Below, piece after piece: positions 5,236 through 57,749 of a stretch of 64,000 nucleotides of DNA; the first letter of the stretch is position 1; each line of letters starts with the position of its first letter. Position numbers and translations under genes: made by a program. Source of the stretch: Scyliorhinus canicula (Eukaryota); NCBI RefSeq assembly GCF_902713615.1, contig NC_052163.1, positions 48,842,878 through 48,906,877 on the forward strand, in the 5' to 3' direction. The notes below the pieces were generated by a model that saw nothing but the letters and a program-made list of their open reading frames with translations, was not told the DNA's origin and searched no databases.

Positions 5236-6806
5236 TAAAAAAAACATATTTTAATGAGGCTTCCACCTGTTTTGGACAGGAGTCTTTGTTGTCAATTTTG
5301 TGGCAGTGGAAAATCAAGTCAGATAACTAATGGCTATCTGGCTTTTGGAAAATTGGTTTTCAATTTTCAACTGCTTACCATCTTGACTTTCAGCATTGAC
5401 AGGGTAAGCAGCAATTGAAATTATTCTTGTGGCATGAGACAGTTCATAGGTCAGGGCCATGGAAGTAATTACATTCAGAAGATGGAGGATGGCGCTTAAG
5501 GACCCTTTTCATGATGATGATAAGGATTGTTGTCCTCAATTAGCAATTAAAGCTCTACAATCTCATTTCCATCTTGTCTTCATTTATAACCTGTTTAGTT
5601 TGTGATTTTCACGGTTATGTAAGATTATAATGATAGAATAAGACTGCAGACCTCTTGTCTATGTATCAGAAATGATGGTTCCAGGTGAGAATTCAACCAT
5701 TTACATCCTTATTAATCACAGCATGCTTACGATGACGTATGGCAATGTTCTGCTGTGGAATATCACATGTTTCTGTTGTTGAGTTCACCGTTCTACATAT
5801 CTTCCATATTGTTTTATCTTCTAACTTTATACTACAGTTTAGTCATTTTACATTTTTCTAATTGCATTACTTTGCAATTGATACAGTTTACACCAGTTCT
5901 CATCAGCATTTTATCAAGAATCTCCAAGCCCAGGTTTTCGGCCTGAGCCCTGTGGGCCCAAGGCTAGCAGGCTGGTGTTCGGGATAACAAAACATGAATT
6001 ATGACCACTACAGCTACAGTTTTAGTCACTAAGCCATAAATACATTTGTGAGAAAGTTCAAAGTTGAAAGTAATCAATGTGTTATTGAGAGGAGGCTGCC
6101 TGTTTTATCTGTAAAGACCCCAATGTTCTGTAGGTTTTTAACAAGTGACACTTGGGACTTCTGGTGGAGACTTTTAGGTGGAGGTCGCATGTTGGGTGGC
6201 TCATGTCAGAGTTCTCGTTTTTTGGCCCCTTTCACCCAGTTTTGGGGAGAACCTTTACATGAGCTGTCTTCAATAAAGTCATGGGAATTATATGATGTTG
6301 AAATCCCAACGAAAGAATATGGCACGTAAAGGACCGAGTGCTGGTTCGCTTCTGGCCTGGGTTCGGTGCTGAGTTCTGTGGGAGGAAAGATGACGGGAGC
6401 AAGTTCGCCGGGTGGGGCTGCGCCCATTACAGTGGATATGCTGGCCGAGTTGATGGCAGTGGAGTTTGAGCAGCAGTTTGCCACGCATTTTGAGAGGCAT
6501 GGAAAGGAGATGCTGGGAACGCTCAAACAGCTGATGCGAGATACGCTGGGTCCAATAAAGGTGGCTCTTGGAAAGATGTCGGAGACAGTGCAGGAGCAAG
6601 GAGAGGTGTTGAAGGGGGTGGGGGAGGGGTGGAGGAGGGTGGGGGCAAGGGTGTTGGCCGCATTTATGAAGGAGATGGGGGAGCGGACCTGTGGCGGTTC
6701 TTACATCCAGGGGGCAGGTAGTCTGTTTTTTACAGCTATAAGATGAAGGAGAAGGTATTGAGATGGGCCAATCAGAATTGGGAGGTAAGATAGGAAGGCC
6801 TGCGCT

Positions 6807-7092
6807 TTGCAGAGTGGTGAGTCACTGCAACAATAATTGCGTGAGTTATTTACTTTAACATCGATACTAGTGATAAGGTTAACAAGATCTAACTACAGTA
6901 ACTAGCTTGAATCCACTAACCATCTGAGCTAATCTGATACTCCAGTCCTGATCACAGTCCATCCAAAAGAGAGAGAGATAGACCTGATGTGGTTTCTTTT
7001 ATACCCCTGTTGGTCAGACCCTCTAGTGATCATGTAGTGCTACTGATTACACATTAACCCCTTATGTACATGCACATGCAGAGATCACGACA
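6807..7092 (-). mobile_element. LTR-like insertion inside L1 ORF1
   Basis: AT-richer block interrupting the G-rich L1; ends …gatcacgaca (TG start on minus) and carries tataaaa on minus. No clear TSD. Confidence 0.45.
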
Positions 7093-17463: not shown

Positions 17464-20400
17464 TGATGCACGATCAATTGCACAAAGATGAGAGTTGCAT
17501 ACAACTGAGGCTTTATTACACTAAGATGTGTGGCCTCCTACAGCAGCTGCCAAAATGGCTGCTGTACAGGGAGCACACATATTTATACTCCTCCTACTGG
17601 GCAGAGCCAGCAGGCAGAGACTACCCCCATACCTGTAGTACAGGGCCTTACCATACATACCCTAATATATACAGCAGTGGTTACTACCACATTCACCCCC
17701 TGTTAAAATTGAGTCCGGTGGGGGTGGTGGAGAACTATATACAGCACAAGTTTAATATACAGAGAAAAGAATTTTGAGTCCAGAACCGAATACAGGTTTA
17801 GCCAGTCCGGAGCCTTGATCTGACGTTGGGAGCGGCACAGTGGTGGCGGCGATTCTGGCGTCTGTTGGGTCCTTGGTGACTCCGGGAGCGTGCCGAGATC
17901 CTCTTCATCCTCGGGCGTGGGCAGGGGGAGGACAGATGTCCTCAGGGGTTGCTGCTGGGTGCGCCGGGGAGGGGAGGGTGGCGCCGGGCTGGGGGTGTGT
18001 GTGTGTGTGTGTGGAGCCTGCTGGCGCCACGTCCCTGAGAGACAGTATCTTGGTGGCCGTCGTAGGCATACTGGGGGTTGGTGTGGAGTAACTGCACCCT
18101 TTCCTCCAACGGGTCCGCCTTGTGGAGTTGTACGTTCTTACGGAGGAGTAAGTTCCTGGAGCTGCGAGCCAAGTCGGGAGCGACACCCCGGAGGTGGACT
18201 TCCTGGGGAAGGCAAAGAGACGTTCATGGGATGTGTCGTTAGTCGCAGTGCATAGGAGCGACCGAATGGAGTGCAGTGCACCGGGAGGACCTCCTGCCAG
18301 TGGGAGGCCGGGAGATTTCTGGACCGGAGGGCCAGCTGAATGGCCCTCCAGACTGTCCCGTTCTCCCTCTTCACCTGTCCGTTACCCCGGGGGTTATAAC
18401 TGGTTGTCCTGCTCGAGGCGATACCCTTGTGGAGCAGGAACTGACGCAGCTCATCGCTCATGAATGAGGATCCCCTGTCACTGTGGATGTAGACGGGGAA
18501 GCCGAACAGAGTGAAGATGGTGTTAAGGGCTTTGATGATGGTGGCAGACGTCATGTCGAGGCATGGGATGGCGAAGGGGAATCTGGAGTACTCATCGTCC
18601 ACACTGAGGAAATACGTGTTCCGGTCGGTGGAGGGAAGGGGCCCTTTGAAATCCACGCTGAGGCATTCAAAGGGGTGGGAGGCCTTCACCAGGCGCGCAT
18701 GGTCCGGCTGGTAGAAGTGTGGTTTGCACTCCGCACAGACCTGGCAGTCTCTGGTGATGGCCCTGACTTCCTCGACGGAGTAGGGCAGATTGCGGGCCTT
18801 AATGAAGTGGTACAACCGTGTGACTCCCGGGTGACAAAGGTGCAGAGTCCAGAGTTGGTCCACCTGTGCGCTGGCACATGTACCTTGGGATAGGGCATCG
18901 GAGGGCTCGTTGAGATTACCGGGGCGATACAAAATCTCGTAGTTGTAGGTGGAGAGTTTGATCCTCCACCTCAAGGTTTTATCATTTTTGATCTTGAACC
19001 GCTGTGTGTTGTTAAACATGAAACCTATCGACTGTTGGCCAGTGAGGAGAGCGAATCTCCTGCCAGCCAGGTAATGCCTCCAATGCCGCACAGCTTCAAC
19101 GATGGCCTGGGCTTCTTTTTCGAAGGAGGAGTGCTGAATTTCAGAGGTATGAAGGTTCCATGTAAAGAATCCCATGGGCTTGCCTGCCTGGTTGAGAGTG
19201 GCAGCTAGAGCGACGTCTGATGCGTCGCTCTCCACTTGAAAGGGTAACGTCTCGTCGACTGCGTGCATCGCGGCCTTGGCAATGTCGGCCCTAATACGGT
19301 TGAAGGCCTGTTGAGCCTCAACTGTCAGGGGGAAAAGGGTGGACTGGATGAGTGGGCGGGCCTTATCTGCATAATTTGGAACCTACTGGGCGTCGTAAGA
19401 AAAGAACCCCAGGCAGCGTTTGAGGGCCTTGGGGCAGTGGGGAAGGGGGAGTTCCATGAGGGGGAGAATGGGGTCGGGGTCGGGCCCCAGAACTCGGTTC
19501 TGGACCACATAGCCGAGGGTGGCTAAGCGGTTCGTGCTGAATACGGACTTCTCCTTGTTATAAGTGAGGTTTAGGAGAGTGGCGCTGCGGAGAAATTTGG
19601 CAAGGTCGGCGTCGTGGTCCTGCTGGTCGTGGCCACAGATGGTGACATTATTTAGGTATGGGAAAATGGCCCGCAGCCCGTACCGGTCGACCATTCAGTC
19701 CATCTCCCTTTGGAAGACCCAGACCCCGTTGGTGACGCCAAAGGGAACCGTAAGAAAATGGTAGAGGCGGCCGTCTGCCTTGAAGGCAGTGTATAGGCGG
19801 TCCGCCTTACGGATGGGGAGCTGGTGGTAGGCAGATTTTAGGTCTACAGTTGAGAAGACCCGGTACTGTGCAGTCTGATTGACCATATCAGATATGCATG
19901 GGAGGGGGTACGCATCGAGCTGCGTGTACCGATTGATGGTCTGGCTGTAGTCCACGACCATTCCGTGTTTCTCCCCCATTTTCACCACTACCACTTGGGC
20001 TCTCCAGGGGCTGTTACTGGCCTCGATGGTGCCTTCCCGAAGCAGCCGCTGGACTTCGGACCTGATGAAGGTCCTGTCCTGAGCACTGTACCATCTGCTC
20101 CTTGTGGCGACGGGTTTGCAATTCGGGGTTAGGTTTGCGAATAGGGAAGGTGGGTCGACCTTTAGGGTCGTGAGACCGCACACAGTGAGGGGTGGTAGGG
20201 GCCCACCGAATTTCAATGTTAGGCCCTGGAGTAACAGGCCGAGTAGCAGGGCAGCGCAGGGGTTGGGGAGGACGTGGAGGTGGAAGCTCTTGAAAACTCT
20301 ATGCCCTGGATAGTGAGCATGGCTATGCAGTACCCCCGGATCGCCATGGAGTGAGACCCGGAGGCCAGGGAGATTCTCTGATTGGCGGGGTGTACCGCGA

Positions 20401-21752
20401 GGGAGCAGCGCCTTACCGTATCGGGATTTATGAAGCTCTCGCTGTTCCCGGAGTCCAGCAGACAGGAGATCTCGTGCCCACCGATCTTCACGCTTGTGGA
20501 GGCGGTTGCTAGATTGTGCGGGCGAGACTGGTTGATCGTGACTGAGGCGAGCCGCGGCTGGTTATCGCTGGTGTCAGGCAATGGGGTGCCCGGGGGGGCA
20601 TGGGTCCTGGAACGATGGTGGCGCCCACGTGCTGTGGGGGAGACAAGATGGCGGCGCCTGCCAATCCTGAAGAGGACCAGATGGCGGCGCCCACGGGCTG
20701 CATTTGGCGGGGGTTGAACAAGATGGCGGTCGGGGTCGGAGCGATAGCAGCGACTGAGCGAGCCTGGCACACCACAGCGAAGTGCCCCTTTTTGCTGCAG
20801 GCCTTGCAAAGGGCGCTCCGGGCCGGGCAGCGTTGGCGGGGGGTGTTTTGGCTGCCCACAGAAGTAACATCTGGGGCCCCCGGGGTTGGCTGGTTGGTGC
20901 GTGGCACAGGTGTAGGGTTGGTTGAGTAGAGTCCCGGATGGGGCGGCTGTCTGCGGGGTCCACGATACGTAGGAGGGGTGGGCCGCGCGGACGGGGATGT
21001 AGGCCTGGATATTGCGCGAGGCGACCATCATCGATAGCGCCAGCGTTTTGGTTGTCGCGAGGTCGAGCGTGTCTCCCTCTAAAAGTCGCTGGCGGATGTA
21101 ATCTGACGCAATCCCCGTAACGAAAGCGTCCCGGCTGAGTACATTCGCGTGTTCCGTGGCCGTGACGGCCTGACAGTCACAGTCTCTGACCAGGGGAGTT
21201 AGGGCACGCCAGAAATCTTCTCTTGACTCACCAGGGAGTTGACGACGAGTTGAGAGGACATGCCTGTCGTAAAGCGTGTTAGTCCGCTGAGCGTAATTCT
21301 CTTTCAGTATCGCCATGGCTTCATCGTAGGTCGGCGCGTCCTGGATAAGCGGAAAAACGCTGGAGCTCAGCCGTGTGTAGAGGATCTGGATCTTCTGAGT
21401 TTCCAGAATTGGGACTGGTGCAGACCTGATGTAAGCTTTTTGGCGTTGCTTGATTCCGGATCGAGCTGCAGGCGATCCGGCTTGTTGCGGAGGTCCATCT
21501 TCTGAAAACTTTAGTGTAATAAATTGATGCACTATCAATTGCACAAAGACGAGAGTTGAATACAACTGAGGCTTTATTACACTAAGATGTGTGACCGCCT
21601 ACAGCAGCTGGCGAAATGGCTGCTGTACAGGGAGCACACATATTTATACTCCGCCTACTGGGTGGAGTCAGCAGGCAGGGACTACCCCCATACCTGTAGT
21701 ACAGAGCCTTACCATACATATCCTAATATATACAGCAGTGGTTACTACCACA
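17464..21752 (-). mobile_element. Full-length compact Ty3/Gypsy LTR retrotransposon (copy G1, 4.3 kb), decayed
   Basis: Two 228-bp LTRs (17464-17691, 21525-21752; TG...CA; about 14 mismatches by hand count). 5-bp TSD cgcgg/tgcgg. PPT agggggtgaa before the 3' LTR. Domain order gag-PR-RT-RH-IN. Confidence 0.96.
17800..21498 (-). pseudogene. Frameshifted gag-pol of G1
   Basis: Gag zinc knuckles CYFCGQPKH..CPARSALCKACSKKGHFAVVC; protease LLDSG; RT (DLKSAYHQ, VPFG, YL(N)N); RNase H (SDAS, EKEAQA, DALS); integrase HHCC and DDE (VDFKGP, HSDRGSSF, GNGQV). Spread over ORFs 20219-21565, 19695-20216, 19383-19694 and 18138-19268. Confidence 0.93.
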
Positions 21753-21942
21753 TGCGGCCTCTGACCCGGAAATACGGGGGCCAGTATCTCTAGCAAAAGC
21801 TGCAAGATTCACTCCGGGTCCCTGCTCGCACCCTGCAGGTCTATGAATTCATCTCACTTTTTTACAGGAATTTCAGGAGTAAACCTCCACCGTTTTGATG
21901 CTGGCGTGGGGACACAGTCTCAATAGTGGAGAATCCAGCCCC
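21753..21942. mobile_element. Harbinger-type terminal segment (the G1 insertion target continues from about 17400)
   Basis: Ends in the TIR-like ggagaatccagccc. G1 sits in …gtgcgcatgcgcgg|…|tgcggcctc. Confidence 0.55.
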
Positions 21943-38206: not shown

Positions 38207-38478
38207 TGTGATGAATGTATAACCTATAAATCCACACTGTATATTACTGTGCCCCTGTGGGCTCCATCTGTGAGCTGTTGCGCGGCTCTGCCTTCAGGGG
38301 GAGATGAGGAGCATGTACAGGGCTCTGCCCTTGGCTCCACCCCCAGCAGGAAGTATAAAATGCTGCGGTCTTGCGAGCCTGCCTTCAGTTCAGTTAGTCG
38401 CAGGCAGGCTCAGTTGGAAGTCGATTAAAGCCACAGTTTACTTCACTTGTGTCTATGAATGAATTGATGGTCGCATCA
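38207..38478 (+). mobile_element. Solo LTR of a related Gypsy subfamily
   Basis: tgtgatgaat…gatggtcgcatca termini, perfect 5-bp TSD gattc, TATAAAA near 38354, ATTAAA near 38424. Confidence 0.9.
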
Positions 38479-39245
38479 GATTCACAGCAGGGGAACTGTT
38501 ATAACCCCATTCGAAACCTGAGCTGAGAAATGTAGGTTATAATCCTACAGCCTTTCCTGCCGGCGGAATCTTCCAGGTTCCGTAAAAGTCGACCCCGCCG
38601 CGGGTTTCCCAATGGCGGCACGGGCGAGGAATGTAATTGCCATCGACTTTACCAGCACCAGGGGATCCCGCTGGCAGCCGATGGTGAGCTGCCTCCGCCG
38701 TGGGTAAGTTCACCGTAGGGAGGTTGGAGAATTCCTCCTGCAGTTTCTAGTAGTTTATATTTGATAACATTTGTTATCGGCAGGAAAGGGTTTAATTTAA
38801 TCAGCACTCGTTTCTCCTCTTACCACTCATTCGTAAACAGAAAGGTGCTTTCATTTGCTTGCCTTTTTAGAAGTGGTGGTGTATTTCCCAATCCTTTGGT
38901 TTTAGTGGAATCCAATTTCTATTAATAATCCCACAGCAATCTTGAGATAGGATGAACTCAAAACTCAGGAGGAGGGTCACAACATTTCCTCTTTTACATC
39001 CATACAGTAAAAGAGAGACAAAGAATGGAAAGATTTACAATGCAGAGACAACAGAGAAAATAAACGTTGGTCAAAATTTTCTGTCCTCGTACATGGCTGG
39101 GATTTTTTTGGTGCTGCTGAGAGTGAATGGAGTTTTGGCTAGAACAACAAATTTTCTGTTCTCGCTCGCAACGGGTCAAGCCATGGGTGAGACCGGAGAA
39201 TCTCGCCCATTGTTTCACATGGGTTCCAGAGCCTAGAATCAACGA

Positions 39246-40772
39246 TGTGGTAGTCACCACTGTTTGCATGATATGCGTATTCAAGGTAATACGGTAAGGC
39301 TCCTGTACTACAGGTACGGGGGTAGATCCCTGCCTTCTGGTTCCACCCAGTAGGCAGAGTATAAATGTGTATGCACACCGAGCTGCTACCATTTCTAGTA
39401 GCAGCTGCAGGAGGCAACACATCTCTGCTTAATAAAGCCTCGATTACTCTCTACTCTCATCTCGTCGTAATTGATAGTGCATCAATTTATTAAGCAGAGA
39501 TATTACAGCGATGGAACTACGCATCAAGCCAGATTGCCTACAGCTGCACCCCCAAGCAGACAATGCTGCGACGGCCTTCGACAACTGGCTAGCTTGCTTC
39601 AAAAGCTACCTCAGATCAGCGACTGAACAGCCCTCAGAAGCACAGAAGCTTCAGATCCTGTACTCATGGGTGAGCTCTGAGATTTTTCCCCTTATCTGGC
39701 ATGCGCCCACTTACCCTGAAGCAATGGAGCTTCTGAAAAGACACTATATCCGGCCAGTCAACAAACTCTATGCCAGGCACCTCCTGTCCACGAGGCAGCA
39801 ACTCTCCGGTGAGTCATTAGATGATTTCTGGCATGCCCTGTACATCCTGGTGAGGAACTGCGATTGTCAGGCAGTTTCGGCCGTGGAACATACAGAACTC
39901 TTAATCAGGGACGCTTTTGTTGCGGGCATACAGTCGGCGTACATCCGCCAGCGCCTATTAGAAGGGGGTACGTGACCAGACACTCGCGAACTCACTAACG
40001 GTAGCCTCCCATAACGTACAGTCGTACGCCCCCGACAGCACAGCACCCTCATGGACATCTTGGGCCCCACCAGCGGCCGCCCCCAGCCAACCCCAAGCCT
40101 CTGCCGTGCAGCAGTCGGCCAACACCGGGGGGCCCAAGTGCTATTTCTGCGGGCAGACAAAACACCCCCGCCAACGCTGCCCGGCGCGTAGTGCAACCTG
40201 CAAGGCCTGCGGAAAGAAGGGACATTTCGCTGCTGTGTGTCAGGCCTGGTCGATCGCTGCTGCACATAGGCCCAGTGTTCCTGCACCCCCCACGTGCGAC
40301 CCGTGGCTGCCACCATTTTTGTCCCCGCATACCACGTGCGGCCCGTGGGTGCTGCCATCTTTAACGCGTCCGCCATATGCACCCCGTGGGCGCCACCATC
40401 TTCGGCGCCATTTTGGACGGTGCCTCAGGACCCCTGTTTGTCGGGGACTTCATCAGGCCGTTCATCGCCTGCCACCGCCGCCGACCAGCCTGGGGCCTAC
40501 CAACACCATCCGCAACTCGCCTCCATCACGCTCAACCAGTCCCGGACGCACAACCTCGCAACCGCAATGACGACGGTGAAAGTCGATGGGCACATGACAT
40601 CCTGCCTTCTTGACTCCGGGAGCACGGAAAGCTTCATCCACCCCTCCATGGTAAGGCACTGCTCCCTCGCAGTACACCCCGTTACCCAGAGAATCTCCCT
40701 GGCCTCCGGATCCCATTCTGTGGAAATCCGGGGGTACTGCATCGTCACCCACACCATCCACGGCGTCGACTT
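39246..40772 (+). mobile_element. 5' half of a Gypsy element (copy G2: 5' LTR, gag, protease), truncated at a fusion junction
   Basis: LTR 39246-39484 (tgtggtag...gtgcatca) with TATA at 39360 and AATAAA at 39431. Gag ATG at 39511 (MELRIKPDCLQLHP). Zinc knuckles near 40140-40240 and protease LLDSGS near 40605. Confidence 0.93.
39360..39436 (+). promoter_or_regulatory. LTR core promoter and poly(A) signal of G2
   Basis: TATAAAT at 39360, Inr-like ccAtttc with the A at 39391 (31 nt after the TATA start), AATAAA at 39431-39436. The same layout is present in the G1, G3 and G4 LTRs. Confidence 0.7.
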
Positions 40773-43700
40773 CGATCGGCCGCCTTGAATAGTCGTTGCG
40801 AGCGCCACAGTTCTGGTGGCGATTCAGGCGTTGGTTCGGTCGTCGGTGACTCCGGGAGCATGTCGACCTCATCTTCATTCCCGGGTGGGAACAAGGGGAG
40901 GGCGGATCGTCCTGGAGTGGGAGCTGTGGTGGGGTGCACCGGGGGGAGGGAGGGTGGCGCTGGGGCAGAGGGGGGGGGGAGTGTGGGGACCCAGCTAGTG
41001 CCAGGTCCCTGAGGGAGACTGTGTCTTGGCGTCCATCGGGGTACGCTACGTAGGCGTACTGCGGATTCATGTGGAGTAGCTGTACCCTCTCAACCAACGG
41101 GTCTGCCTTGTGGAGCCACATGTGCTTGCAGAGGAGAACGGGTCCTTGAGCTGCCAGCCATGTTGGGAGCGAAACCCCGGAGGTGGACTTCCTGGGGAAG
41201 GCAAAGAGACGTTCATGGGGAGTTTTGTTAGTCGCAGTGCACAGGAGCAACCGAATGGAGTGAAGGGCGTCGGGGAGGACCTCCTGCCAGCAGGAGATCG
41301 GGCGATTTCTGGACCGTAGGGCCAGCTGGATGGCCTTCCAGACCATCCCATTCTCCCGCTCCACCTGCCCGTTTCCCCGGGGGTTGTAGCTGTGATGCGC
41401 TAACAATTGCACACAAAGACTTGAATCGGTACAAGAGAGGCTTTATTACCGTGAGATGTTATTCCTTCGACTGCAGCTGTAGAATGGAAGCTCAGGAGAG
41501 CTCATGAATATTTATATTGCTCCCTGTGGGTGGAGCTAGCCGGCAGGGGCTTACCGACAAACCTGTAATACAGGTACTGCTGTACATCCCCTAATACAGG
41601 CACACACACATATATATACAGTGGTGGATTACCACATTCATCCCCTGTTAAGAATGAATCCGGCGGGGCTGACGTGTAACTATATACCTGATCCGTGATT
41701 TATTTACAGAGGGGAGGGGTAAAAAAATTAAATGTCCATCTTGCAACCCGGTGCCCGTCATAGGTTGAGTCTGACCGGCGGTCTGACGGTTCGTTGAGAG
41801 CGAAGCAGCAGCGGTGGCGACGTCTGCATAGGTGGTGTCGGAGTCGACGGCATGGGTGGTGGCGGTCTTGGTCATGGCCAGTGACCGGACGACTCCGGGA
41901 GCGTGCCGAAATCTTCCATATCCTCTAGTGTGGGCAGGGGAACAAGGGATGGACCTGGTGGGGCTGATGTTGGGGGCGCCGGGGAAGGGGAGGGTGGCGC
42001 GTGGGTGGGGAGGTGTGTGGGCGTGGGATCAGCACCCGAGGGAGCCAGGTCCCTGAGCGAGACCATATCCTGGCGGCCGTCGGGGAACTCCACGTAGGCA
42101 TACTGGAGGTTTGCGTGGAGCAGGCGTATCCTGTCCACCAGAGGGTCTGCCTTGTGGAGTCTGACATGCCTACGCAGTAGGACCGGCCCTGGAGCTGCGA
42201 GCCAAGTCGGGAGCAACACCCCGGATGTAGACTTCCTAGGGAAGGTAAAAACACGTTCATGGGGTGTGTTGTTAGTCGCGTGCACAGCAGTGACCGAATG
42301 GAGTGGAGTGTATCAGGGAGGACCTGCTGCCAGCGAGCGGCTGGGGGGTTCCTGGGCCATAGGGCCAGCTGGACGGCCGTCCATACCGTCCCATTCTCCC
42401 TCTCTACCTGCCCGTTTCCCCAGGGGTTGTAGCTGGTCGTCCTGCTGGAGGCTATACCCCTGCTGAGCAGGAACTGACGCAGCTCATCGCCCATGAATGA
42501 GGATCCCCTGTCACTGTGGATGTAGTCGGGGAAACCGAACAGGACGAATACGGGCGAAGGCCTGTTGTGCCTCGGCCGTGAGGGGAAATTGCGTGGACTG
42601 GATCAGTGGGCGGGTCTTGGCCGTGTATTGTGGGCATAGTAAGAAAAGAACCCCAGGCATCGTTTGAGAGCATTGGGGCAGTGGGGGAGGGGAAGCTCCA
42701 TGAGGGGGCGAATGCGGTCGGGATCGGGCCCCAGTAGTCGCGTTTTGGACTACGTAGCCGAGGATGGATAATCGGTCTGTGCAGAAAACGCACTTCTCCT
42801 TGTTATCAGTGAGGTTGAGGAGAGATGCGGTGTGGAGAAATTTGGCACGGTTGGCGTCATGGTCCTCCTGGTCGTGGCTGCAGATGGTGACATTATCTAA
42901 GTACGGAAACGTGGCCCGCAGTCCGTACCGGTCAACCATTCGGTCCATTTCTCGTTGAAATACCGAGACCCCGTTAGTGACGCCGAAGGGAACCCTAAGG
43001 AATTGATAAAGGCGACCGTCTGCCTCGAAGGGACGGTGTAGGGACGGTCCGATTTGCGGATGGGGAGCTGGTGGTACGCGGATTTCAGGTCAATTGTTGA
43101 GAAGACCCGATACTGCGCAATCTGATTGACCATATCAGATATGCGTGGGAGGGGGTACGCGTCGAGCTGCGTGTACCGGTTGATGGTCTGGCTGTAGTCC
43201 ACAACCATCCTGTGTTTCTCCCCAGTTTTAACCACCACCACTTGGGCTCTCCAGGGGCTGTTGCTGGCCTCAATAATACCCTCCTGAAGCAGCCGCTGGA
43301 CTTCGGACCTGATGAATGTCTTGTCCTGGGTGCTGTACCATCTGCTCCTGGTGGCGACGGGCTTGGAATCTGCAGTCAGATTGGCAAAGAGGGAGGGAGG
43401 GTCAACCTTGAGGGTCGTGAGGTCGCAAACGGTGAGTGGAGGTAGGGGTCCGCCGAATTTGAGAGTGAGGCTCTGGAGGTTACATTGGAAGTCCAGGCCC
43501 AGTAAAAGTGTCGCACAGAGGTTGGGGAGAACGTACAGGCGGAAACCGCTGAATTCAATGCCTTGCACAGTGAGTTTGACCAGACAGAAGCCCCGGATCG
43601 GGACAGAGTGGGATCCGGAGGCCAGGGAGATCTGTTGGTTTGCGGGATGGACCGTGAGGGAGCAGCGCCTTCCTGTGTGCGGATGGATGAAGCTGTCGGT

Positions 43701-46700
43701 TCTCCCGGAGTCAAGTAGGCAGGAGGTCGCGTGGCCGTTGATGAGCACCGTCGTTGAAGCGGTGGCCAGGTTGCGAGGACGGGGTTGATCGAGTGTCATG
43801 GAGGCGAGTAGCGGGCGATCGTCCGAAGAGTCCGATGAGTAGCGGCAGCGACCCGGGTCCTGTGGTCCAGTCCCGAGGGGAGGACAAAATGGCGGCGTCC
43901 GAAGTACCTGCGGGGAAGAAGATGGCGGCGCCCATGGAGCGCATATTGCAGGGGCGGGGCAAGATGGCGGAGCCCACTGATCGCACATGGAGTCGGGGGA
44001 GGAAGATGGCGGCGCCCATTGGTCGCATGTGGCCCCGGGAGCAGCAGATGGCGGGGCCCATTGCGCGATCGGCTGGTGAGAGGGGGAGAGGTCGGGCGCG
44101 ATAGCGGCAACTGCGCGGGCCTGACACACCGCTGCAAAGTGGCCTTTCATGCCAAAGGATTTACAGGTCACGGTGCGGGCCGGGCAGCGCTGGCGGGGGT
44201 GCTTCTGCAGAAGTAGCAGCGGGGACCCCCAGGGTGCGCGGTGTGGCGAGCAGCGCAGGCATACTGCGCGGGAGCGGCCCCAGTAGGGGGGGTCGGTTGC
44301 GGGGTCCACGAGGGGTAGGATGGGTGGGCCATGCGGTGGGCGGGGTAGGATTGCAGGTTACATGAAGCGACCGTCATAGAGAGCGCTAAAGTCTTTGTCG
44401 CCGCTAGATCGAGTGCGGCCCCTTCCAGCAGTCTTTGCCGGATGGGGTCCGATGCAATACCCGTCACAAAAGCGTCTCGCATGAGGAGGTTGGAATGTTC
44501 TGTTGCCGAGACGCCTGGCACTCGCAGTCCCGTACTAGAGGGATAAGGGCCCGCCAGAAGTCCTCAATCGACTCACCCGGTTGCTGGACGCGAGTGACGA
44601 GTACATGCCTCGCAAACAGAGTGTTCGTCGACTGGACGTAATTTTCTTTGAGAAGTTCCATAGCACGGGCGTAGGTCGGTGCGTCCTGTATCAGCGGGAA
44701 CACGCTGGAGTTCTACCTTGAGTAGAGTAGTTGAATTTTCTGAGCTTCCGATGGTGTAGGGTCCGCTGAGGTGATGTAGGCCTCGAAGACAGCCAGCCAG
44801 TGGTTAAAGTCTTTTCTGGCGTTTGGCGATTACGGATCCAGCTGCAAGCGGTCGGGTTTAATTCTGATGTCCATGATGCGGAAAATCTCACGGTAATAAA
44901 TTGATGCGCTAACAATTGCACACAAAGACTCAAATCGGTACAAGAGAGGCTTTATTACCGTGAGATGTTATTCCTTCGACCGCAGCTGTAGAATGGCAGC
45001 TCAGGAGAACTCATGAATATTTATACTGCTCCCTGTGGGCGGAGCTAGCCGGCAAACCTGTAATACAGGTACTGCTGTACATCCCCTAATACAGGCACAC
45101 ACACATATATATACAGTGGTGGATCAGCACAAGCTGGTCGTCCTGCTCGAGGCAATGCCCCTGTTGAGCAGGTACTGACGCAGCTTATAGCTCATAAATG
45201 AGGATTCCCGGTCGCTGTGGACGTAGGTGAGGAAACAGAACAGAGCGAAGGTGGTGTTGAGGGCTTTGATGACGGGGGCAGACATCATATTGGGGCATGG
45301 GATGGTGAAGGGGAATCTTGAACATTCGTCGTCCACGTTGAGAAATTACGTGTTGCGGTCGGTGGAGGGGAGGGGACCTTTGAAGTCCACGCTGAGGCAT
45401 TCAAAGGGGCGGGAGGCCTTCACCAGGTGTGCACGGTCTGGCCGGTAGAAGGGCGGTTTACACTCAGCGCAGACCTGACAGTCTCTGGTGATAGCCCTGA
45501 CTTCCTCGATGGAGTAGGGCAGATTGCGGGCCTTTTTGAAGTGATAAAAGCGGGTGACCCCTGGGTGACAGAGATCGTCGTGCAGGGTGCGGAGTCGGTC
45601 CACTTGTGCGCTGGCACATGAACCTCGGGACAGGGCATTGGGGGGCTCGTTGAGCTTACCGGGGCGATACAAAATCTCATAATTGTAGGTGGAGAGCTCG
45701 ATCCTCCACCTCAAGATTTTATCATTTTTGATTTTACCCCGCTGTGTGTTGTTAAACCTGAAGGCAACCGACCATTGGTCAATGAGGAGAGTGAATCTCC
45801 TGCCGGCGAAGTAATGCCTCCAATGCAGCACAGCTTCAACAATAGCTTGGGCCTCCTTTTCAACAGAGGAATGCCGAATTTCGGAGGCATGGAGGGTGCG
45901 GGAAAAGAATGCCATGGGCCTGCCTGCCTGGTTGAGGGTGGCGGCCAGAGCGACTTCTGATGCATCGCTCTCCACTTGGAAGGGGAGCGTCTCATCGACC
46001 GCGTGCATCGCAGCCTTGGCGATGTCGGCCTTGATATGGTTGAAGGCCTGGTGAGCCTCGGCCGTCAGGGGAAAAACTGTGGAGTGAATGCGTGGACGGG
46101 CCTTGCCCGCATAGTTTGGGACCCACTGAGCGTAGTACGAGAAGAATCCCATGCATCGTTCGAGGGCCTTGGAGCAGTGGGGGAGGGGGAGTTCCATGAG
46201 GGGGCGCAAGCGATCGGGGCCAGGCCCTGGAACTCCATTCCGAACCACATAGCCGAGGATGGCTAATCGGTTCGTGATGAACACACACTTCTCCTTGTTG
46301 TAGGTTAGGTTGAGAGGTTTGGCGGCGTGGAGAAATTTGGAAAGGTTAGCATCGTGGTCCTGCTGGTCGTGGCCACGTGATATTATCCAGGTACGGGAAA
46401 GTGGCCCGCAGTCCGTACTGATCAACCATTCAGTCCACCTCCCGTTGGAAGACCGAGACCCCGTTAGTAATGCCGAAGGGAACCCTGAGGAAGTGCTAAA
46501 GGGGGCCGTCCGCTTCAAACGCGGTGTACGGCTGGTCCGCCTTGCGAATGGGGAGCTGATGGTAGGCAGATTTCAGGTCCACTGTCGAGAAGATCCGGTG
46601 CTGTGCAATCTGATTGACCATATCAGATATGCGTGGGAGGGGGTACGCGTCGAGCTGCGTGTACCGATTGATGGTCTGATTGTAGTCAACAACCATCTGT

Positions 46701-48490
46701 TTTTCTCCCCAGTTTTCACCATGACAACTTGGGCTCTCCAGGGGCTGTTGTTGGCCTCAATAATACGTTCCCGCAGCAGCCGCTGGACCTCAGACCTGAT
46801 GAAGGTCGAGTCCTGGGCACTGTACCGTCTGCTCCTGGTGGCGACGGGTTTGCAATCCGGGGTTAGGTTTGCAAATAGGGAAGGTGGGTCGACCTTAAGG
46901 GTCACGAGGCCGCACACAGTAAGGGGTGGTAGGGGTCTGCCAAATTTCAGGGTTAGGCTCTGGAGGTTGCACTGGAAGTCCAGGCCAAGTAGCAAGGGAG
47001 CACAGGGGTTGGGGAGGAAGTAGAGCTGGAAGACGCTGAACTCTACGCCCTGGATGGTGAGGGTGGCGGTGCAGTACCCCTGGATCGCCACGGATTGGGA
47101 GCCGGAGGCCAGGGAGCTTCTCTGGTTGATGGGTTGGACCGTGAGGGAGCAGCGCCTTATCGTATTGGGATGGATGAAGCTCTCAGTACTCCCGGAGTCT
47201 AGAAGGCAGGATATCTTGTGCCCGTCGACCGTCACTGTCGTTCGACGCGGTCGCGAGGTTGTGTGGTCGGGATTGGTCGATCGTGATGGAGGCCAGAAAT
47301 GGCTGGTCGGCGGTGGTTGCAGGCGATGAGCGGCCCGATGAGGTGCCCGACGAGCAGAGGTCCTGAGGCAGGGGAGATGTGGCGCCCACGGGCCTCATGG
47401 GTTGTGAGGCGAGGAAGATGGCGAGCAAGATGGCGGCGCTCACGGGCTGCACGTGTTGTGAGGGGAGCAAGATGGCGGCGCCCATGGGCCGCACATGGTC
47501 GGAGGCGAGGAAGATGGCGGCGCCCGCGGGTCACACATGGGACGATAGCGGCGACCGAGCGGGCCTGGCACACAGCAGCAAAATGTCCTTTCTTCCTGCA
47601 GGCCTTGCAGAGTGCGCTCCGTGCCGGGCAACGCTATCGGGGGTGTTTTGACTGTTTGCAGAAGTAGGACTTGGGTCTCCCGGGGTAGGTTGGCTGCCGT
47701 GTGGCGCAGGCCTGGGGTTGGCTGGGGGAGATCACTGGTGGGGTCCACGGTGAGGTGTTCGCTGGCGGGGTCCAGGATGCCCAGGAGGGCTGGGCCGTGC
47801 GGTCGGGAGCATATGCCTGTATATTGTGTGAGGCAACTGTGAGCGAGAGCGCTAGTTTCTTGGTCGCCGCGAGGTCAAGGGTAGCCCCTTCTAAGAGGCG
47901 CTGGCGGATGTAGGCCGACCCTATGCCCGTAACGAATGCGTCTCTAATTAGCAGGTCAGAATGATCAGCGGCCGAAACGGCCTGGCAATCGCAGTCTCTC
48001 ACCAGGACGTGCAGGACACGCTAGAAATCTTCCACGGACTCACCGGGGAGTTGATACCGCGTGGAGAGGAGGTGCCTGGCGTAGATTTTGTTGGTCTGCT
48101 GAGCGTAGTTTTCCTTCAGTAGCGCCATGGCCTCAGCAAGCTAGCCAATGTGCGAAGGCCAACTTGGCATTGTCCGCTTGAGGGTGCAGCTGCAGGCGAT
48201 CAGGCTTGATGCAGAGATCCATCGTTTTTAAAATCTCTACGTAATAAATTGATGCACTATCAATTACGACGAGACGGGAGTAGAGTGTAATCGAGGCTTT
48301 ATTACACAGAGATGTGGAGCCTCCCGCAGCTGCTGCTGAAATGGCTGCAGCTCGGAGAGCCCACACATTTATACTCCGCCTACTGGGCGGAGCCAGCAGG
48401 CAGGAATCTACCCCCGTACCTGTAGTACAGGGGCCTTACCGTAATACCCTCGTATGCAGTATACACAATACAACAGTGGTGACTACCACA
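40773..48490 (-). mobile_element. Gypsy element copy G4 (5' LTR 48250-48490, gag-pol), lacking its 3' LTR and interrupted in integrase by copy G3
   Basis: Gag ATG at 48222 (MDLCIKPDRLQLHP); PR, RT, RH and IN in ORFs 46573-47235 and 45346-46518. The integrase sequence breaks at 45132 and resumes at 41392 (…SRTTS|YNPRGNGQVERENG), then ends near 40773. Confidence 0.92.
41393..45131 (-). mobile_element. Nested Gypsy element copy G3 (3.7 kb) with an internal deletion of RNase H and the N-terminal half of integrase
   Basis: LTRs 41393-41636 and 44902-45131. Perfect 5-bp TSD agctg (41388-41392, 45132-45136). Gag ATG at 44874; RT FPYLDNVT. Near 42544 the RT connection (AEAQQAFARIR) is joined directly to the integrase core (FGFPDYIHSDRG). 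Confidence 0.95.
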
Positions 48491-57559: not shown

Positions 57560-57749
57560 GGGGCTGGTTTAGCTCACTGGGCTAAATCGCTGGCTTTTAA
57601 AGCAGACCAAGCAGGCCAGCAGCACGGTTCGATTCCCGTACCAGCCGCCCCGGACAGGCGCCGGAATGTGGCGACTAGGAGCTTTTCACAGTAACTTCAT
57701 TGAAGCCTACTCGTGACAATAAGCGATTTTCATTTTCATTTCATTTTCA
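57560..57749 (+). mobile_element. Short tRNA-derived SINE with (tttca)n tail, nested in an older SINE (57352-57915)
   Basis: Head ggggctggtttagctcactggg, B box ggttcgattcc, and a tail shared with 3027-3336 and 58189-58492. Confidence 0.82.

What the first reader, a model, noticed from the sequence alone, without database searches (positions are those of the whole stretch)
39391..39513. Gypsy family with no tRNA PBS: the PBS position is complementary to the element's own AAUAAA-containing R segment, with covariation across four copies (candidate self-priming / poly(A)-occlusion switch)
Seen: one nt after the 5' LTR end (…gtgcatca, 39484) there is no TGG-starting tRNA PBS. Instead tttattaagcagagat (39486-39501) is the perfect reverse complement of atctctgcttaataaa (39421-39436), which contains the poly(A) signal. 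The same geometry (49-50 nt loop, 1-nt spacer after the LTR CA) occurs in G1, G3 and G4, each with a different sequence on both arms: ttagtgtaataaa, atctcacggtaataaa, atctctgtgtaataaa. Established: Tf1/sushi chromoviruses self-prime using the first ~11 nt of their RNA, and HIV-1 hides its 5' AAUAAA in a hairpin. Inference: the paired segment lies about +31 to +46 from the predicted TSS (39391), not at the 5' end, and its 3' end (AAUAAA) points straight into U5. A cut after AAUAAA, or annealing of the 3'-terminal R copy, would give a correctly placed minus-strand primer. The same stem would mask the 5' poly(A) signal, since the partner exists only downstream of the 5' LTR, and it sits just upstream of the gag AUG. 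One RNA stem could thus couple priming, polyadenylation choice and translation. From memory, self-priming Gypsy groups have been noted in repeat databases, so novelty must be checked.
Basis: partly seen in the sequence, partly recalled or inferred. Interest (0 to 1): 0.92.

Follow-up and report, generated by a model that had tools for sequence, protein, structure and literature searches.

The report
Self-priming Gypsy retrotransposon, poly(A)-signal primer
These shark retrotransposons, and relatives from sea anemones to insects, have no tRNA primer site: the bases right after the 5' repeat pair with the repeat's own segment ending at the poly(A) signal, so the element most likely primes its own reverse transcription, a variant of the yeast Tf1 mechanism.

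Summary
In G2, 39421-39436 (ending in AATAAA) is the perfect reverse complement of 39486-39501. That partner starts one base after the 5' LTR's terminal CA.

The same geometry, with different sequences, occurs in G1, G3 and G4. I also found it in nine fetched elements: two further catshark copies, two copies of one stingray family, a sea anemone, a damselfly, an isopod, a whipworm and two unnamed contigs.

- **Covariation:** across 12 elements 95% of stem cells pair, against 72% in shuffles. Eleven of 16 pairs change on both sides, including an ATTAAA/TTTAAT swap inside the hexamer.
- **No room for a tRNA site:** none of the sites starts with TGG, and the leader is only 17-27 nt.
- **Family:** the elements are compact (about 4.3-4.5 kb), single-ORF, chromodomain-less Ty3/Gypsy elements, so they lack the hallmark of the Tf1/sushi chromoviruses.

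The best reading is self-primed reverse transcription from an R segment cut just after the hexamer. Masking of the 5' poly(A) signal is a plausible by-product.

A conserved TATA box and initiator place the transcription start about 30 nt upstream of the arm, but RNA reads did not settle it.

The scan reached the same reading on another piece of this genome (s1-195922). I found no published description.

The parts
39245..39484 (+). 5' LTR of G2 (TG...CA). G2 is truncated at about 40782.
   Evidence: Self-BLAST. 75-86% identical to the LTRs of G1 and G4.
39360..39366 (+). TATAAAT box, 31 nt upstream of the initiator-like A at 39391
   Evidence: Same spacing in all six catshark copies.
39389..39394 (+). 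CCATTT initiator/YY1-like motif. Predicted transcription start A 39391 (inferred, not mapped).
   Evidence: The motif is conserved in catshark copies. GCCGCCATGTTTTG sits at a similar place in cnidarian-type elements.
39421..39436 (+). R arm, the proposed self-primer. It is 10 variable nt plus the poly(A) hexamer AATAAA (39431-39436). Proposed cut after 39436.
39437..39447 (+). 5' strand of the inner stem, directly after the hexamer
   Evidence: RNAalifold on six catshark copies. One pair is kept through changes on both sides in two copies.
39467..39480 (+). 3' strand of the inner stem (end of U5). It leaves AUCAA (39481-39485) unpaired as the first template bases.
39485..39485 (+). Single-base spacer A between the LTR's CA and the primer-binding site. 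Invariant in all 13 elements.
39486..39501 (+). Primer-binding site, perfect complement of 39421-39436
39511..39975 (+). Start of gag (ATG 39511), 9 nt after the stem
21525..21753 (-). G1 5' LTR. R arm 21585..21573.
   Evidence: LTR pair 93.9% identical.
21511..21523 (-). G1 primer-binding site (13 bp with its arm)
17464..17692 (-). G1 3' LTR. It carries the arm (17524..17512) but has no partner downstream.
44902..45131 (-). G3 5' LTR. R arm 44966..44951.
44885..44900 (-). G3 primer-binding site, 16 bp perfect, third sequence variant
41393..41636 (-). G3 3' LTR (arm 41457..41442, no partner downstream)
   Evidence: 90.6% identical to the 5' LTR.
48250..48490 (-). G4 5' LTR. R arm 48313..48298.
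48233..48248 (-). G4 primer-binding site. 16 pairs, two of them G-U.

Best explanation
These are self-priming Ty3/Gypsy retrotransposons.

Shown:
- In the genomic RNA, a segment of the 5' LTR transcript made of about 10 free-drifting bases plus the poly(A) hexamer pairs with the 11-16 bases that begin one nucleotide after the LTR's terminal CA. That is where other LTR elements carry a tRNA-binding site.
- An inner stem between the bases just after the hexamer and the end of U5 stacks under this duplex and leaves AUCAA unpaired.
- The pairing, its geometry and its covariation are conserved across animal phyla.

Inferred, by analogy with Tf1:
- The element's RNase H cuts the RNA just after the hexamer. 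The new 3'-OH is extended through the spacer and U5 back to the cut, giving a minus-strand strong-stop DNA of about 25-50 nt.
- That DNA transfers to the 3' R copy through the roughly 20 nt between the hexamer and the poly(A) site.
- Plus-strand strong-stop synthesis copies the primer. The site is therefore rewritten from the arm in each cycle, which would explain why every subfamily has its own perfectly matched pair.
- The transcript probably starts about 30-45 nt upstream of the arm, so the primer would carry a 5' tail.
- The partner exists only downstream of the 5' LTR, so the same duplex probably hides the 5' AAUAAA while the 3' copy stays open.
For: - **Position and orientation.** The site starts exactly one base after CA in 13 elements. 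CAATTTATT is almost invariant, and the arm's 3' end faces U5.
- **No alternative primer site.** No site begins with TGG. The leader from the LTR end to the gag ATG is only 17-27 nt.
- **Covariation.** 95.3% of cells pair, against 72.3% in shuffles (0 of 500 reach the observed value). Eleven of 16 pairs change on both sides, and slid registers pair at 35-44%. Each arm pairs 7-10 of 10 variable positions with its own site; between unrelated lineages the figure is 0-5.
- **The hexamer covaries too.** ATTAAA pairs with TTTAAT in L012.
- **Breadth.** Two catshark species (Scyliorhinus), Hypanus, Actinostola, Ischnura, Armadillidium and Trichuris.
- **Age trend.** Pairing is perfect in copies with 99-100% identical LTRs (L002, L006, L012). 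It is imperfect in G1, L001, G4 and L007, three of which have 94-98% identical LTR pairs; G4's 3' LTR is missing.
- **Structure.** The duplex is in the minimum-free-energy fold of all eight tested RNAs. z is -5.3 and -5.5 for the core hairpins, and there is a conserved inner stem.
- **Precedent.** Tf1, Tf2 and Tj1 self-prime using an RNase H cut and a multi-duplex structure (PMC10085805, PMC4600332, PMC5341516).
Against: - There is no direct evidence for the cut, the primer or the strong-stop DNA.
- The transcription start and the poly(A) site are unmapped. Reads from four RNA runs were sparse, mostly under 90% alike, and showed no start or end pile-ups.
- If the start is upstream of the arm, the primer has a 30-45-nt 5' tail. 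Plus-strand synthesis could copy that tail and leave an unpaired 3' flap at the second strand transfer. Tf1 avoids this because its primer is the very 5' end.
- The stem is only 11-13 bp in three elements: L008, G1 and L005.
- The host tRNA set could not be searched.
Confidence: 0.72

Rival explanations
1. This is ordinary Tf1-type self-priming. Transcription starts at the first base of the arm, so the primer is the very 5' end of the RNA (11-16 nt). Nothing is unusual apart from the hexamer lying inside it.
For: It is the only experimentally established geometry (PMC10085805, PMC4600332). It avoids the 5'-tail problem at the second strand transfer. The transcription start was not mapped here.
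Against: A canonical TATAAA with an initiator-like A 30-34 nt downstream is conserved in six catshark copies, in Hypanus and in L008. It lies 59-77 nt upstream of the arm at variable distance. There is no TATA-like box about 30 nt upstream of the arm in the catshark copies.
Confidence: 0.18
2. The stem is only a regulatory RNA structure. It might hide the 5' AAUAAA from the cleavage machinery, or serve packaging, dimerisation or translation control. Reverse transcription would be primed by something else.
For: AAUAAA is inside the duplex in every element, and the partner is absent at the 3' end. HIV-1 embeds its hexamer in a hairpin (established knowledge, not tested here).
Against: A purely regulatory stem has no reason to begin exactly one base after the LTR's CA in every phylum. 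No other primer site fits in the 17-27-nt leader. Arm sequences turn over quickly and each has a perfectly matched partner, which is what copying of the primer predicts.
Confidence: 0.07
3. The complementarity is chance, or the site is a diverged tRNA or tRNA-fragment binding site.
For: The host tRNA set could not be screened.
Against: Seven of 13 elements have 15-16-nt perfect complements at one fixed geometry. The sequences differ between elements while each tracks its own LTR. No site starts with TGG.
Confidence: 0.02

Closest known systems
Tf1 / Tf2 / Tj1 of fission yeasts and the Tf1/sushi group (self-primed reverse transcription, 'pretzel' structure)
   Same: No tRNA site. The bases just after the 5' LTR pair with a segment of the element's own LTR transcript. 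There are additional duplexes between sequence next to the site and LTR sequence downstream of the primer. An RNase H cut at the duplex end is the expected source of the primer (PMC10085805, PMC4600332).
   Different: In Tf1 the primer is the first 11 nt of the mRNA, whereas here promoter motifs place it 30-45 nt inside. Here the primer always ends with the poly(A) hexamer. The elements have no chromodomain, so they lack the hallmark of the Tf1/sushi chromovirus lineage. The hosts are animals from cnidarians to sharks.
Plant Tcn1 (Gypsy) and TAR (Copia) lineages with predicted self-priming
   Same: Self-priming is predicted from LTR/site complementarity alone, in lineages defined by phylogeny (PMC6317226).
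   Different: Different lineages and hosts. I found no reported link to the poly(A) signal.
HIV-1 poly(A) hairpin
   Same: AAUAAA lies in a stem within the 5' leader, which could limit premature polyadenylation.
   Different: The HIV hairpin lies wholly within R and forms at both ends. Here the partner lies outside the LTR, so only the 5' copy can pair. It also occupies the primer-binding position. This comparison rests on established knowledge and was not tested here.
Retroviral U5-IR stem and tRNA primer-binding site
   Same: The site lies 1-2 nt after CA. A stem joins U5 to leader sequence next to the site. The site is rewritten from the primer at plus-strand strong stop.
   Different: The primer is the element's own RNA, not a host tRNA, so the site and primer drift together.
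Mag lineage of Ty3/Gypsy (SURL, Jule; 'Mag C' with LTRs of about 174 bp, PMC3601003)
   Same: Compact, single gag-pol ORF, short LTRs with a clear AATAAA, metazoan-wide including vertebrates.
   Different: Phylogenetic placement was not tested here. I could not read the primary papers on Jule or the Anopheles Mag elements to see what primer site they report.

Membership tests
Ty3/Gypsy (Metaviridae) LTR retrotransposon | Domain order PR-RT-RNase H-IN, flanked by TG...CA LTRs with a polypurine tract before the 3' LTR | tested here: met
   Pfam on window ORFs and on the 1350-aa L002 polyprotein. LTR pairs. A polypurine tract ending in GGGGTGAA or a close variant abuts the 3' LTR.
Self-priming LTR retrotransposons (mechanistic class defined by Tf1) | No tRNA-complementary site. 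The sequence right after the 5' LTR is complementary to the element's own LTR transcript. | tested here: met
Self-priming LTR retrotransposons (mechanistic class defined by Tf1) | The primer is the very 5' end of the mRNA | tested here: inconclusive
   TATA and initiator motifs predict a start 30-45 nt upstream of the arm. RNA reads did not map it.
Self-priming LTR retrotransposons (mechanistic class defined by Tf1) | Extra duplexes next to the primer duplex ('pretzel', U5-IR-like) | tested here: met
   Inner stem 39437-39447 with 39467-39480 in the consensus fold, with one compensated pair. Inner stems also appear in the L002, L004 and L005 folds.
Self-priming LTR retrotransposons (mechanistic class defined by Tf1) | RNase H cleaves the RNA at the end of the duplex, and the fragment primes minus-strand DNA | not testable with these tools
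   Needs biochemistry or sequencing of cDNA intermediates.
Tf1/sushi group of chromoviruses (phylogenetic family) | Chromodomain at the integrase C-terminus | tested here: not met
   No chromodomain hit at E up to 0.1 in the L002 polyprotein. The C-terminus is low-complexity and ends in RRSxRxxRPPDRL.
Tf1/sushi group of chromoviruses (phylogenetic family) | RT/IN phylogeny groups it with Tf1 and sushi-ichi | not tested
   No reference sequences could be fetched with these tools.
Mag lineage (C clade) | RT-RH-IN phylogeny groups it with SURL and Jule | not tested
   Only indirect fit: size 4.3-4.5 kb, single ORF, LTRs 132-274 bp.
Poly(A)-signal occlusion hairpin (HIV-1 type) | AAUAAA is base-paired in the 5' leader and this reduces 5' polyadenylation | tested here: inconclusive
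   The pairing is shown. The effect on polyadenylation cannot be tested here.

The most novel reading that the evidence does not exclude
In an ancient pan-metazoan Gypsy lineage, one RNA duplex does three jobs. It creates an internal, 5'-tailed self-primer by a cut right after AAUAAA. It silences the promoter-proximal poly(A) signal only at the 5' end. It gates access to the gag AUG 2-11 nt downstream. That would be a priming geometry different from Tf1, and it would need its own solution for the second strand transfer, such as a second cut or a block to copying the tail.
Probability: 0.3. Interest if true: 0.85.

Novelty: new variant of a known kind. Interest (0 to 1): 0.68.

Why it matters
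Self-priming has been demonstrated only in fission-yeast Tf1-type elements and predicted for their chromovirus relatives and two plant lineages.

Here a different, chromodomain-less Gypsy clade, spread from cnidarians to sharks, shows the sequence signature of self-priming. Several copies look recent, with uninterrupted ORFs and identical LTRs. The primer also always ends in the poly(A) hexamer.

Three consequences follow:
- tRNA-independent priming would be a widespread animal strategy.
- Annotation pipelines that look for tRNA sites will fail on these elements or mislabel them.
- tRNA-fragment-based host defences that target primer-binding sites would not reach these elements.

It also offers a natural system in which primer generation, poly(A) site choice and translation may be coupled by one stem. 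The constant CA-A-TTTATT junction is a simple search key for the whole clade.

Tried and rejected
- **RNA reads.** Two raw oligo-dT runs and two contig runs were laid on 38900-40800 at 85% likeness. Reads were few and mostly came from other copies. No pile-ups appeared, and no poly(A) loose ends appeared among those listed, so neither the transcription start nor the poly(A) site could be read.
- **Contig ends as transcript ends.** L009 and L010 stop about 30 nt inside the LTR on both sides, as assembly unitigs do, and L008 also stops inside the LTR. They say nothing about RNA ends. L009 and L010 lack the arm, so their TTTAAT site could not be paired.
- **tRNA screen.** ARAGORN found one tRNA-like gene in the window and none in nine loci. 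A host tRNA set was not available.
- **A TGG site overlapping the gag ATG.** Rejected. It varies between copies, is TGA in L004, and lies 25 nt from the LTR.
- **The palindrome around 39382-39407 as an RNA hairpin.** Rejected. The predicted start lies in its loop.
- **Clade naming.** No reference sequences for Tf1, sushi, Mag or SURL could be fetched. The Jule, Anopheles Mag and Levin 1995 papers are not held.
- **P0003.** Not on record.
- **Literature.** Eight searches found no description of a primer ending in AAUAAA. This covers the held library only.

Full report
**1. The observation**

- The G2 5' LTR runs 39245-39484 (TG...CA) and is followed by a single A (39485).
- The 16 bases 39486-39501 are the perfect reverse complement of 39421-39436. 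That segment ends in the poly(A) hexamer AATAAA (39431-39436).
- It is the only inverted repeat of 10 nt or more in 39245-39560.
- The gag ATG follows at 39511.

Self-BLAST and direct reading place three more copies on the minus strand.

| Copy | LTRs | Pairing |
|---|---|---|
| G1 | 17464-17692 and 21525-21753, 93.9% identical | 13 bp |
| G3 | 41393-41636 and 44902-45131, 90.6% identical | 16 bp, perfect |
| G4 | 5' LTR 48250-48490 | 16 bp, two G-U |

Each copy has its own arm sequence, a matching partner, a 48-50-nt loop and the junction CA-A-TTTATT. The 3' LTRs carry the arm but are followed by unrelated flank.

**2. What the elements are**

Window ORFs carry gag, aspartyl protease, RVT_1, RNase H and rve domains in Gypsy order. 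All four window copies are decayed or truncated.

The G1 gag-PR piece finds catshark proteins (Scyliorhinus torazame and S. canicula, 47-87% identity) and stingray proteins (Hypanus sabinus, 35-38%).

A Hypanus locus (L002) holds a 4548-bp element with 100% identical 212-bp LTRs. It has one uninterrupted 1350-aa gag-PR-RT-RH-IN ORF. Pfam finds no chromodomain in it.

A search with that polyprotein returned 897 proteins at E of 1e-20 or below; those listed are mostly about 1100-1350 aa. Named sources include rays, catsharks, Trichuris, the sea anemone Actinostola, the damselfly Ischnura and the isopod Armadillidium. There are also many ENA and Logan contigs of about 4 kb.

The clade is therefore compact, single-ORF, chromodomain-less and metazoan-wide. 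It resembles what the literature calls the Mag lineage, C clade (PMC3601003), but I could not test that placement.

**3. The same architecture elsewhere**

Fetching the DNA around nine homologues gave nine more elements that show the feature, plus two contigs too short to judge. In every element that reaches the arm, the bases after CA-A complement an LTR segment ending in the hexamer.

| Locus | Source | Pairing |
|---|---|---|
| L004 | S. torazame | 16 bp, perfect |
| L001 | S. torazame | 16 positions, one mismatch and one G-U |
| L002, L003 | Hypanus | 16 bp, perfect; unrelated sequence; duplex runs one base past the hexamer |
| L008 | Logan contig | 11 bp |
| L005 | Actinostola | 13 bp, plus 5 more after a bulge |
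| L006 | Ischnura | 16 bp, perfect |
| L011 | Armadillidium | 14 bp |
| L007 | Trichuris suis | 16 bp; perfect against the 3' LTR arm, one mismatch against the 5' LTR arm |
| L012 | ENA contig | 15 bp |

In L012 the hexamer is ATTAAA and the site begins TTTAAT. Loop lengths range from 24 to 51 nt.

**4. Covariation**

On a 12-element alignment, 95.3% of the 192 stem cells form standard pairs, against 72.3% in column shuffles (0 of 500 reach the observed value).
- Eleven of 16 pairs show changes on both sides, including position 2 of the hexamer.
- Sliding the 3' partner by 1-3 columns drops pairing to 35-44%.
- An 11-element alignment that included Hypanus, mis-registered by one base, gave 92.6%.

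In an anchored count, each arm pairs at 7-10 of its 10 variable positions with its own site. Between unrelated lineages the figure is 0-5.

The duplex is in the minimum-free-energy fold of all eight RNAs tested. The core hairpins have z = -5.3 (G2), -5.5 (L002) and -4.9 (L004).

RNAalifold on six catshark copies adds an inner stem, 39437-39447 with 39467-39480. One of its pairs is kept through changes on both sides in two copies. The inner stem leaves AUCAA (the LTR end plus the spacer) unpaired.

**5. Mechanism**

The position and polarity are those of a primer-binding site.
- The arm's last A pairs with the first base of the site. Extension from a 3'-OH at that A would copy the spacer and then U5.
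- No site starts with TGG.
- The leader from the LTR end to the ATG is 17-27 nt, so nothing else fits.

Self-priming of this kind is established for Tf1 and Tf2 and proposed for Tj1. In those elements a 5' segment of the mRNA pairs with the site, the RNase H domain cuts the RNA, and neighbouring duplexes form a 'pretzel' (PMC10085805 section 28, PMC4600332, PMC5341516).

I infer the same chemistry here, with the cut just after the hexamer.
- The strong-stop DNA would carry the complement of the stretch between the hexamer and the poly(A) site. That would mediate transfer to the 3' R copy.
- Plus-strand strong-stop synthesis copies the primer, so the site is rewritten from the arm in each cycle.
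- This accounts for a different, matched pair in every subfamily within one genome.
- It also fits the age trend. Pairing is perfect in copies with 99-100% identical LTRs (L002, L006, L012). Defects occur in G1, L001, G4 and L007; the three with both LTRs are 94-98% identical.

**6. Where the RNA starts**

All six catshark copies have TATAAAT/G (TATAAGT in L004) exactly 31 nt upstream of the A in a conserved CCATT(T/C) motif (39391 in G2). The arm starts 30 nt further on.
- Hypanus has TATAAAGG 34 nt before a TCAGTC initiator, and the arm starts 43 nt further on.
- L008 has TATAAGAG 30 nt before TCATTC, and the arm frame starts 38 nt further on.
- The two cnidarian-type elements carry GCCGCCATGTTTTG 18-31 nt upstream of the arm.

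This remains an inference.

RNA reads from four runs were few, mostly from diverged copies, and showed no start or end pile-ups.

An internal primer raises a real difficulty. Plus-strand synthesis could copy the 5' tail and leave a flap at the second strand transfer. Either the tail is removed, or copying is blocked, or the start is at the arm after all.

**7. Poly(A) occlusion and translation**

The hexamer is inside the duplex in every element, and the partner exists only downstream of the 5' LTR. The 5' signal can therefore be masked while the 3' one is free.

This is a plausible second function. It may explain why the primer always ends at the hexamer, but nothing here tests it. The AUG lies 2-11 nt after the stem, and any coupling to translation is speculation.

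**8. Novelty**

In the held literature I found self-priming described for three groups: Tf1/sushi chromoviruses, the related Tcn1 clade, and plant TAR Copia elements (PMC6317226, PMC3601003, PMC10085805).

I found no description of a chromodomain-less metazoan clade that uses it, nor of a primer ending in the poly(A) hexamer (eight searches). The primary papers on Jule and the Anopheles Mag elements were not available, so an older remark cannot be excluded.

A 2025 paper on Saci2-like elements in tapeworms reads strong variation in primer-site sequences as switching between tRNAs (PMC12471100). Whether that is the same phenomenon was not checked.

My evidence was gathered independently and agrees.

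**9. Verdict**

Self-priming is the best explanation (about 0.7). The internal position of the primer and the poly(A) switch are open. This is a new variant of a known kind.

Noticed in passing
L002:7001-11053 (RT motif near residue 705); window G1 about 19700-19720 (minus strand): The RT catalytic box reads YLDN (YLNN in decayed G1) instead of YxDD. The L002 copy that carries it has an uninterrupted ORF and identical LTRs. Ischnura, Trichuris and Armadillidium members keep YLDD and still have the arm/site pairing.
   Followed up: partly
C-terminus of L002:7001-11053 and of homologues P0017, P0018, P0020, P0026, P0092, P0113: A conserved C-terminal motif, RRSxRxxRPPDRL, ends the polyprotein after a low-complexity tail in elements from rays, nematodes and isopods. 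Function unknown.
   Followed up: no
window 39389-39398; L005 about 2393-2406; L012 about 1901-1914: A YY1-like GCC(G)CCAT(N)TTT(G) motif sits at the predicted start site in shark elements and 18-31 nt upstream of the arm in two cnidarian-type elements, although the LTRs are otherwise unalignable.
   Followed up: partly
window 38350-38478: A solo or 3' LTR of a sister subfamily has TATAAAA, a TCAGTT initiator-like motif, ATTAAA in place of AATAAA (38423-38428) and the usual ...TTGATGGTCGCATCA end. Unrelated flank follows.
   Followed up: partly
window 39245-48490: Family members are packed head to tail or nested. Truncated G2 is followed by an inverted 3' fragment (40782-41392), then G3 (41393-45131), which abuts G4 (45134-48490). 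This suggests repeated insertion into earlier copies.
   Followed up: no
L006:2461-2472 versus L006:6230: In the Ischnura element the two LTRs are 100% identical over 132 bp. The 5' copy runs 12 nt further (TATTTTACTACA) before the A-TTTATT site. The 3' copy lacks these 12 nt and so has no terminal CA. Unexplained.
   Followed up: no
L005:1-2296 and 6267-6904: In the Actinostola locus long arrays of a 53-bp tandem repeat lie directly upstream of the 5' LTR and directly downstream of the 3' LTR, so the element sits within the array.
   Followed up: no
window 57562-57649: ARAGORN calls an 88-nt tRNA-Phe-like gene with anticodon AAA. It may be a tRNA-derived repeat and was not examined.
   Followed up: no
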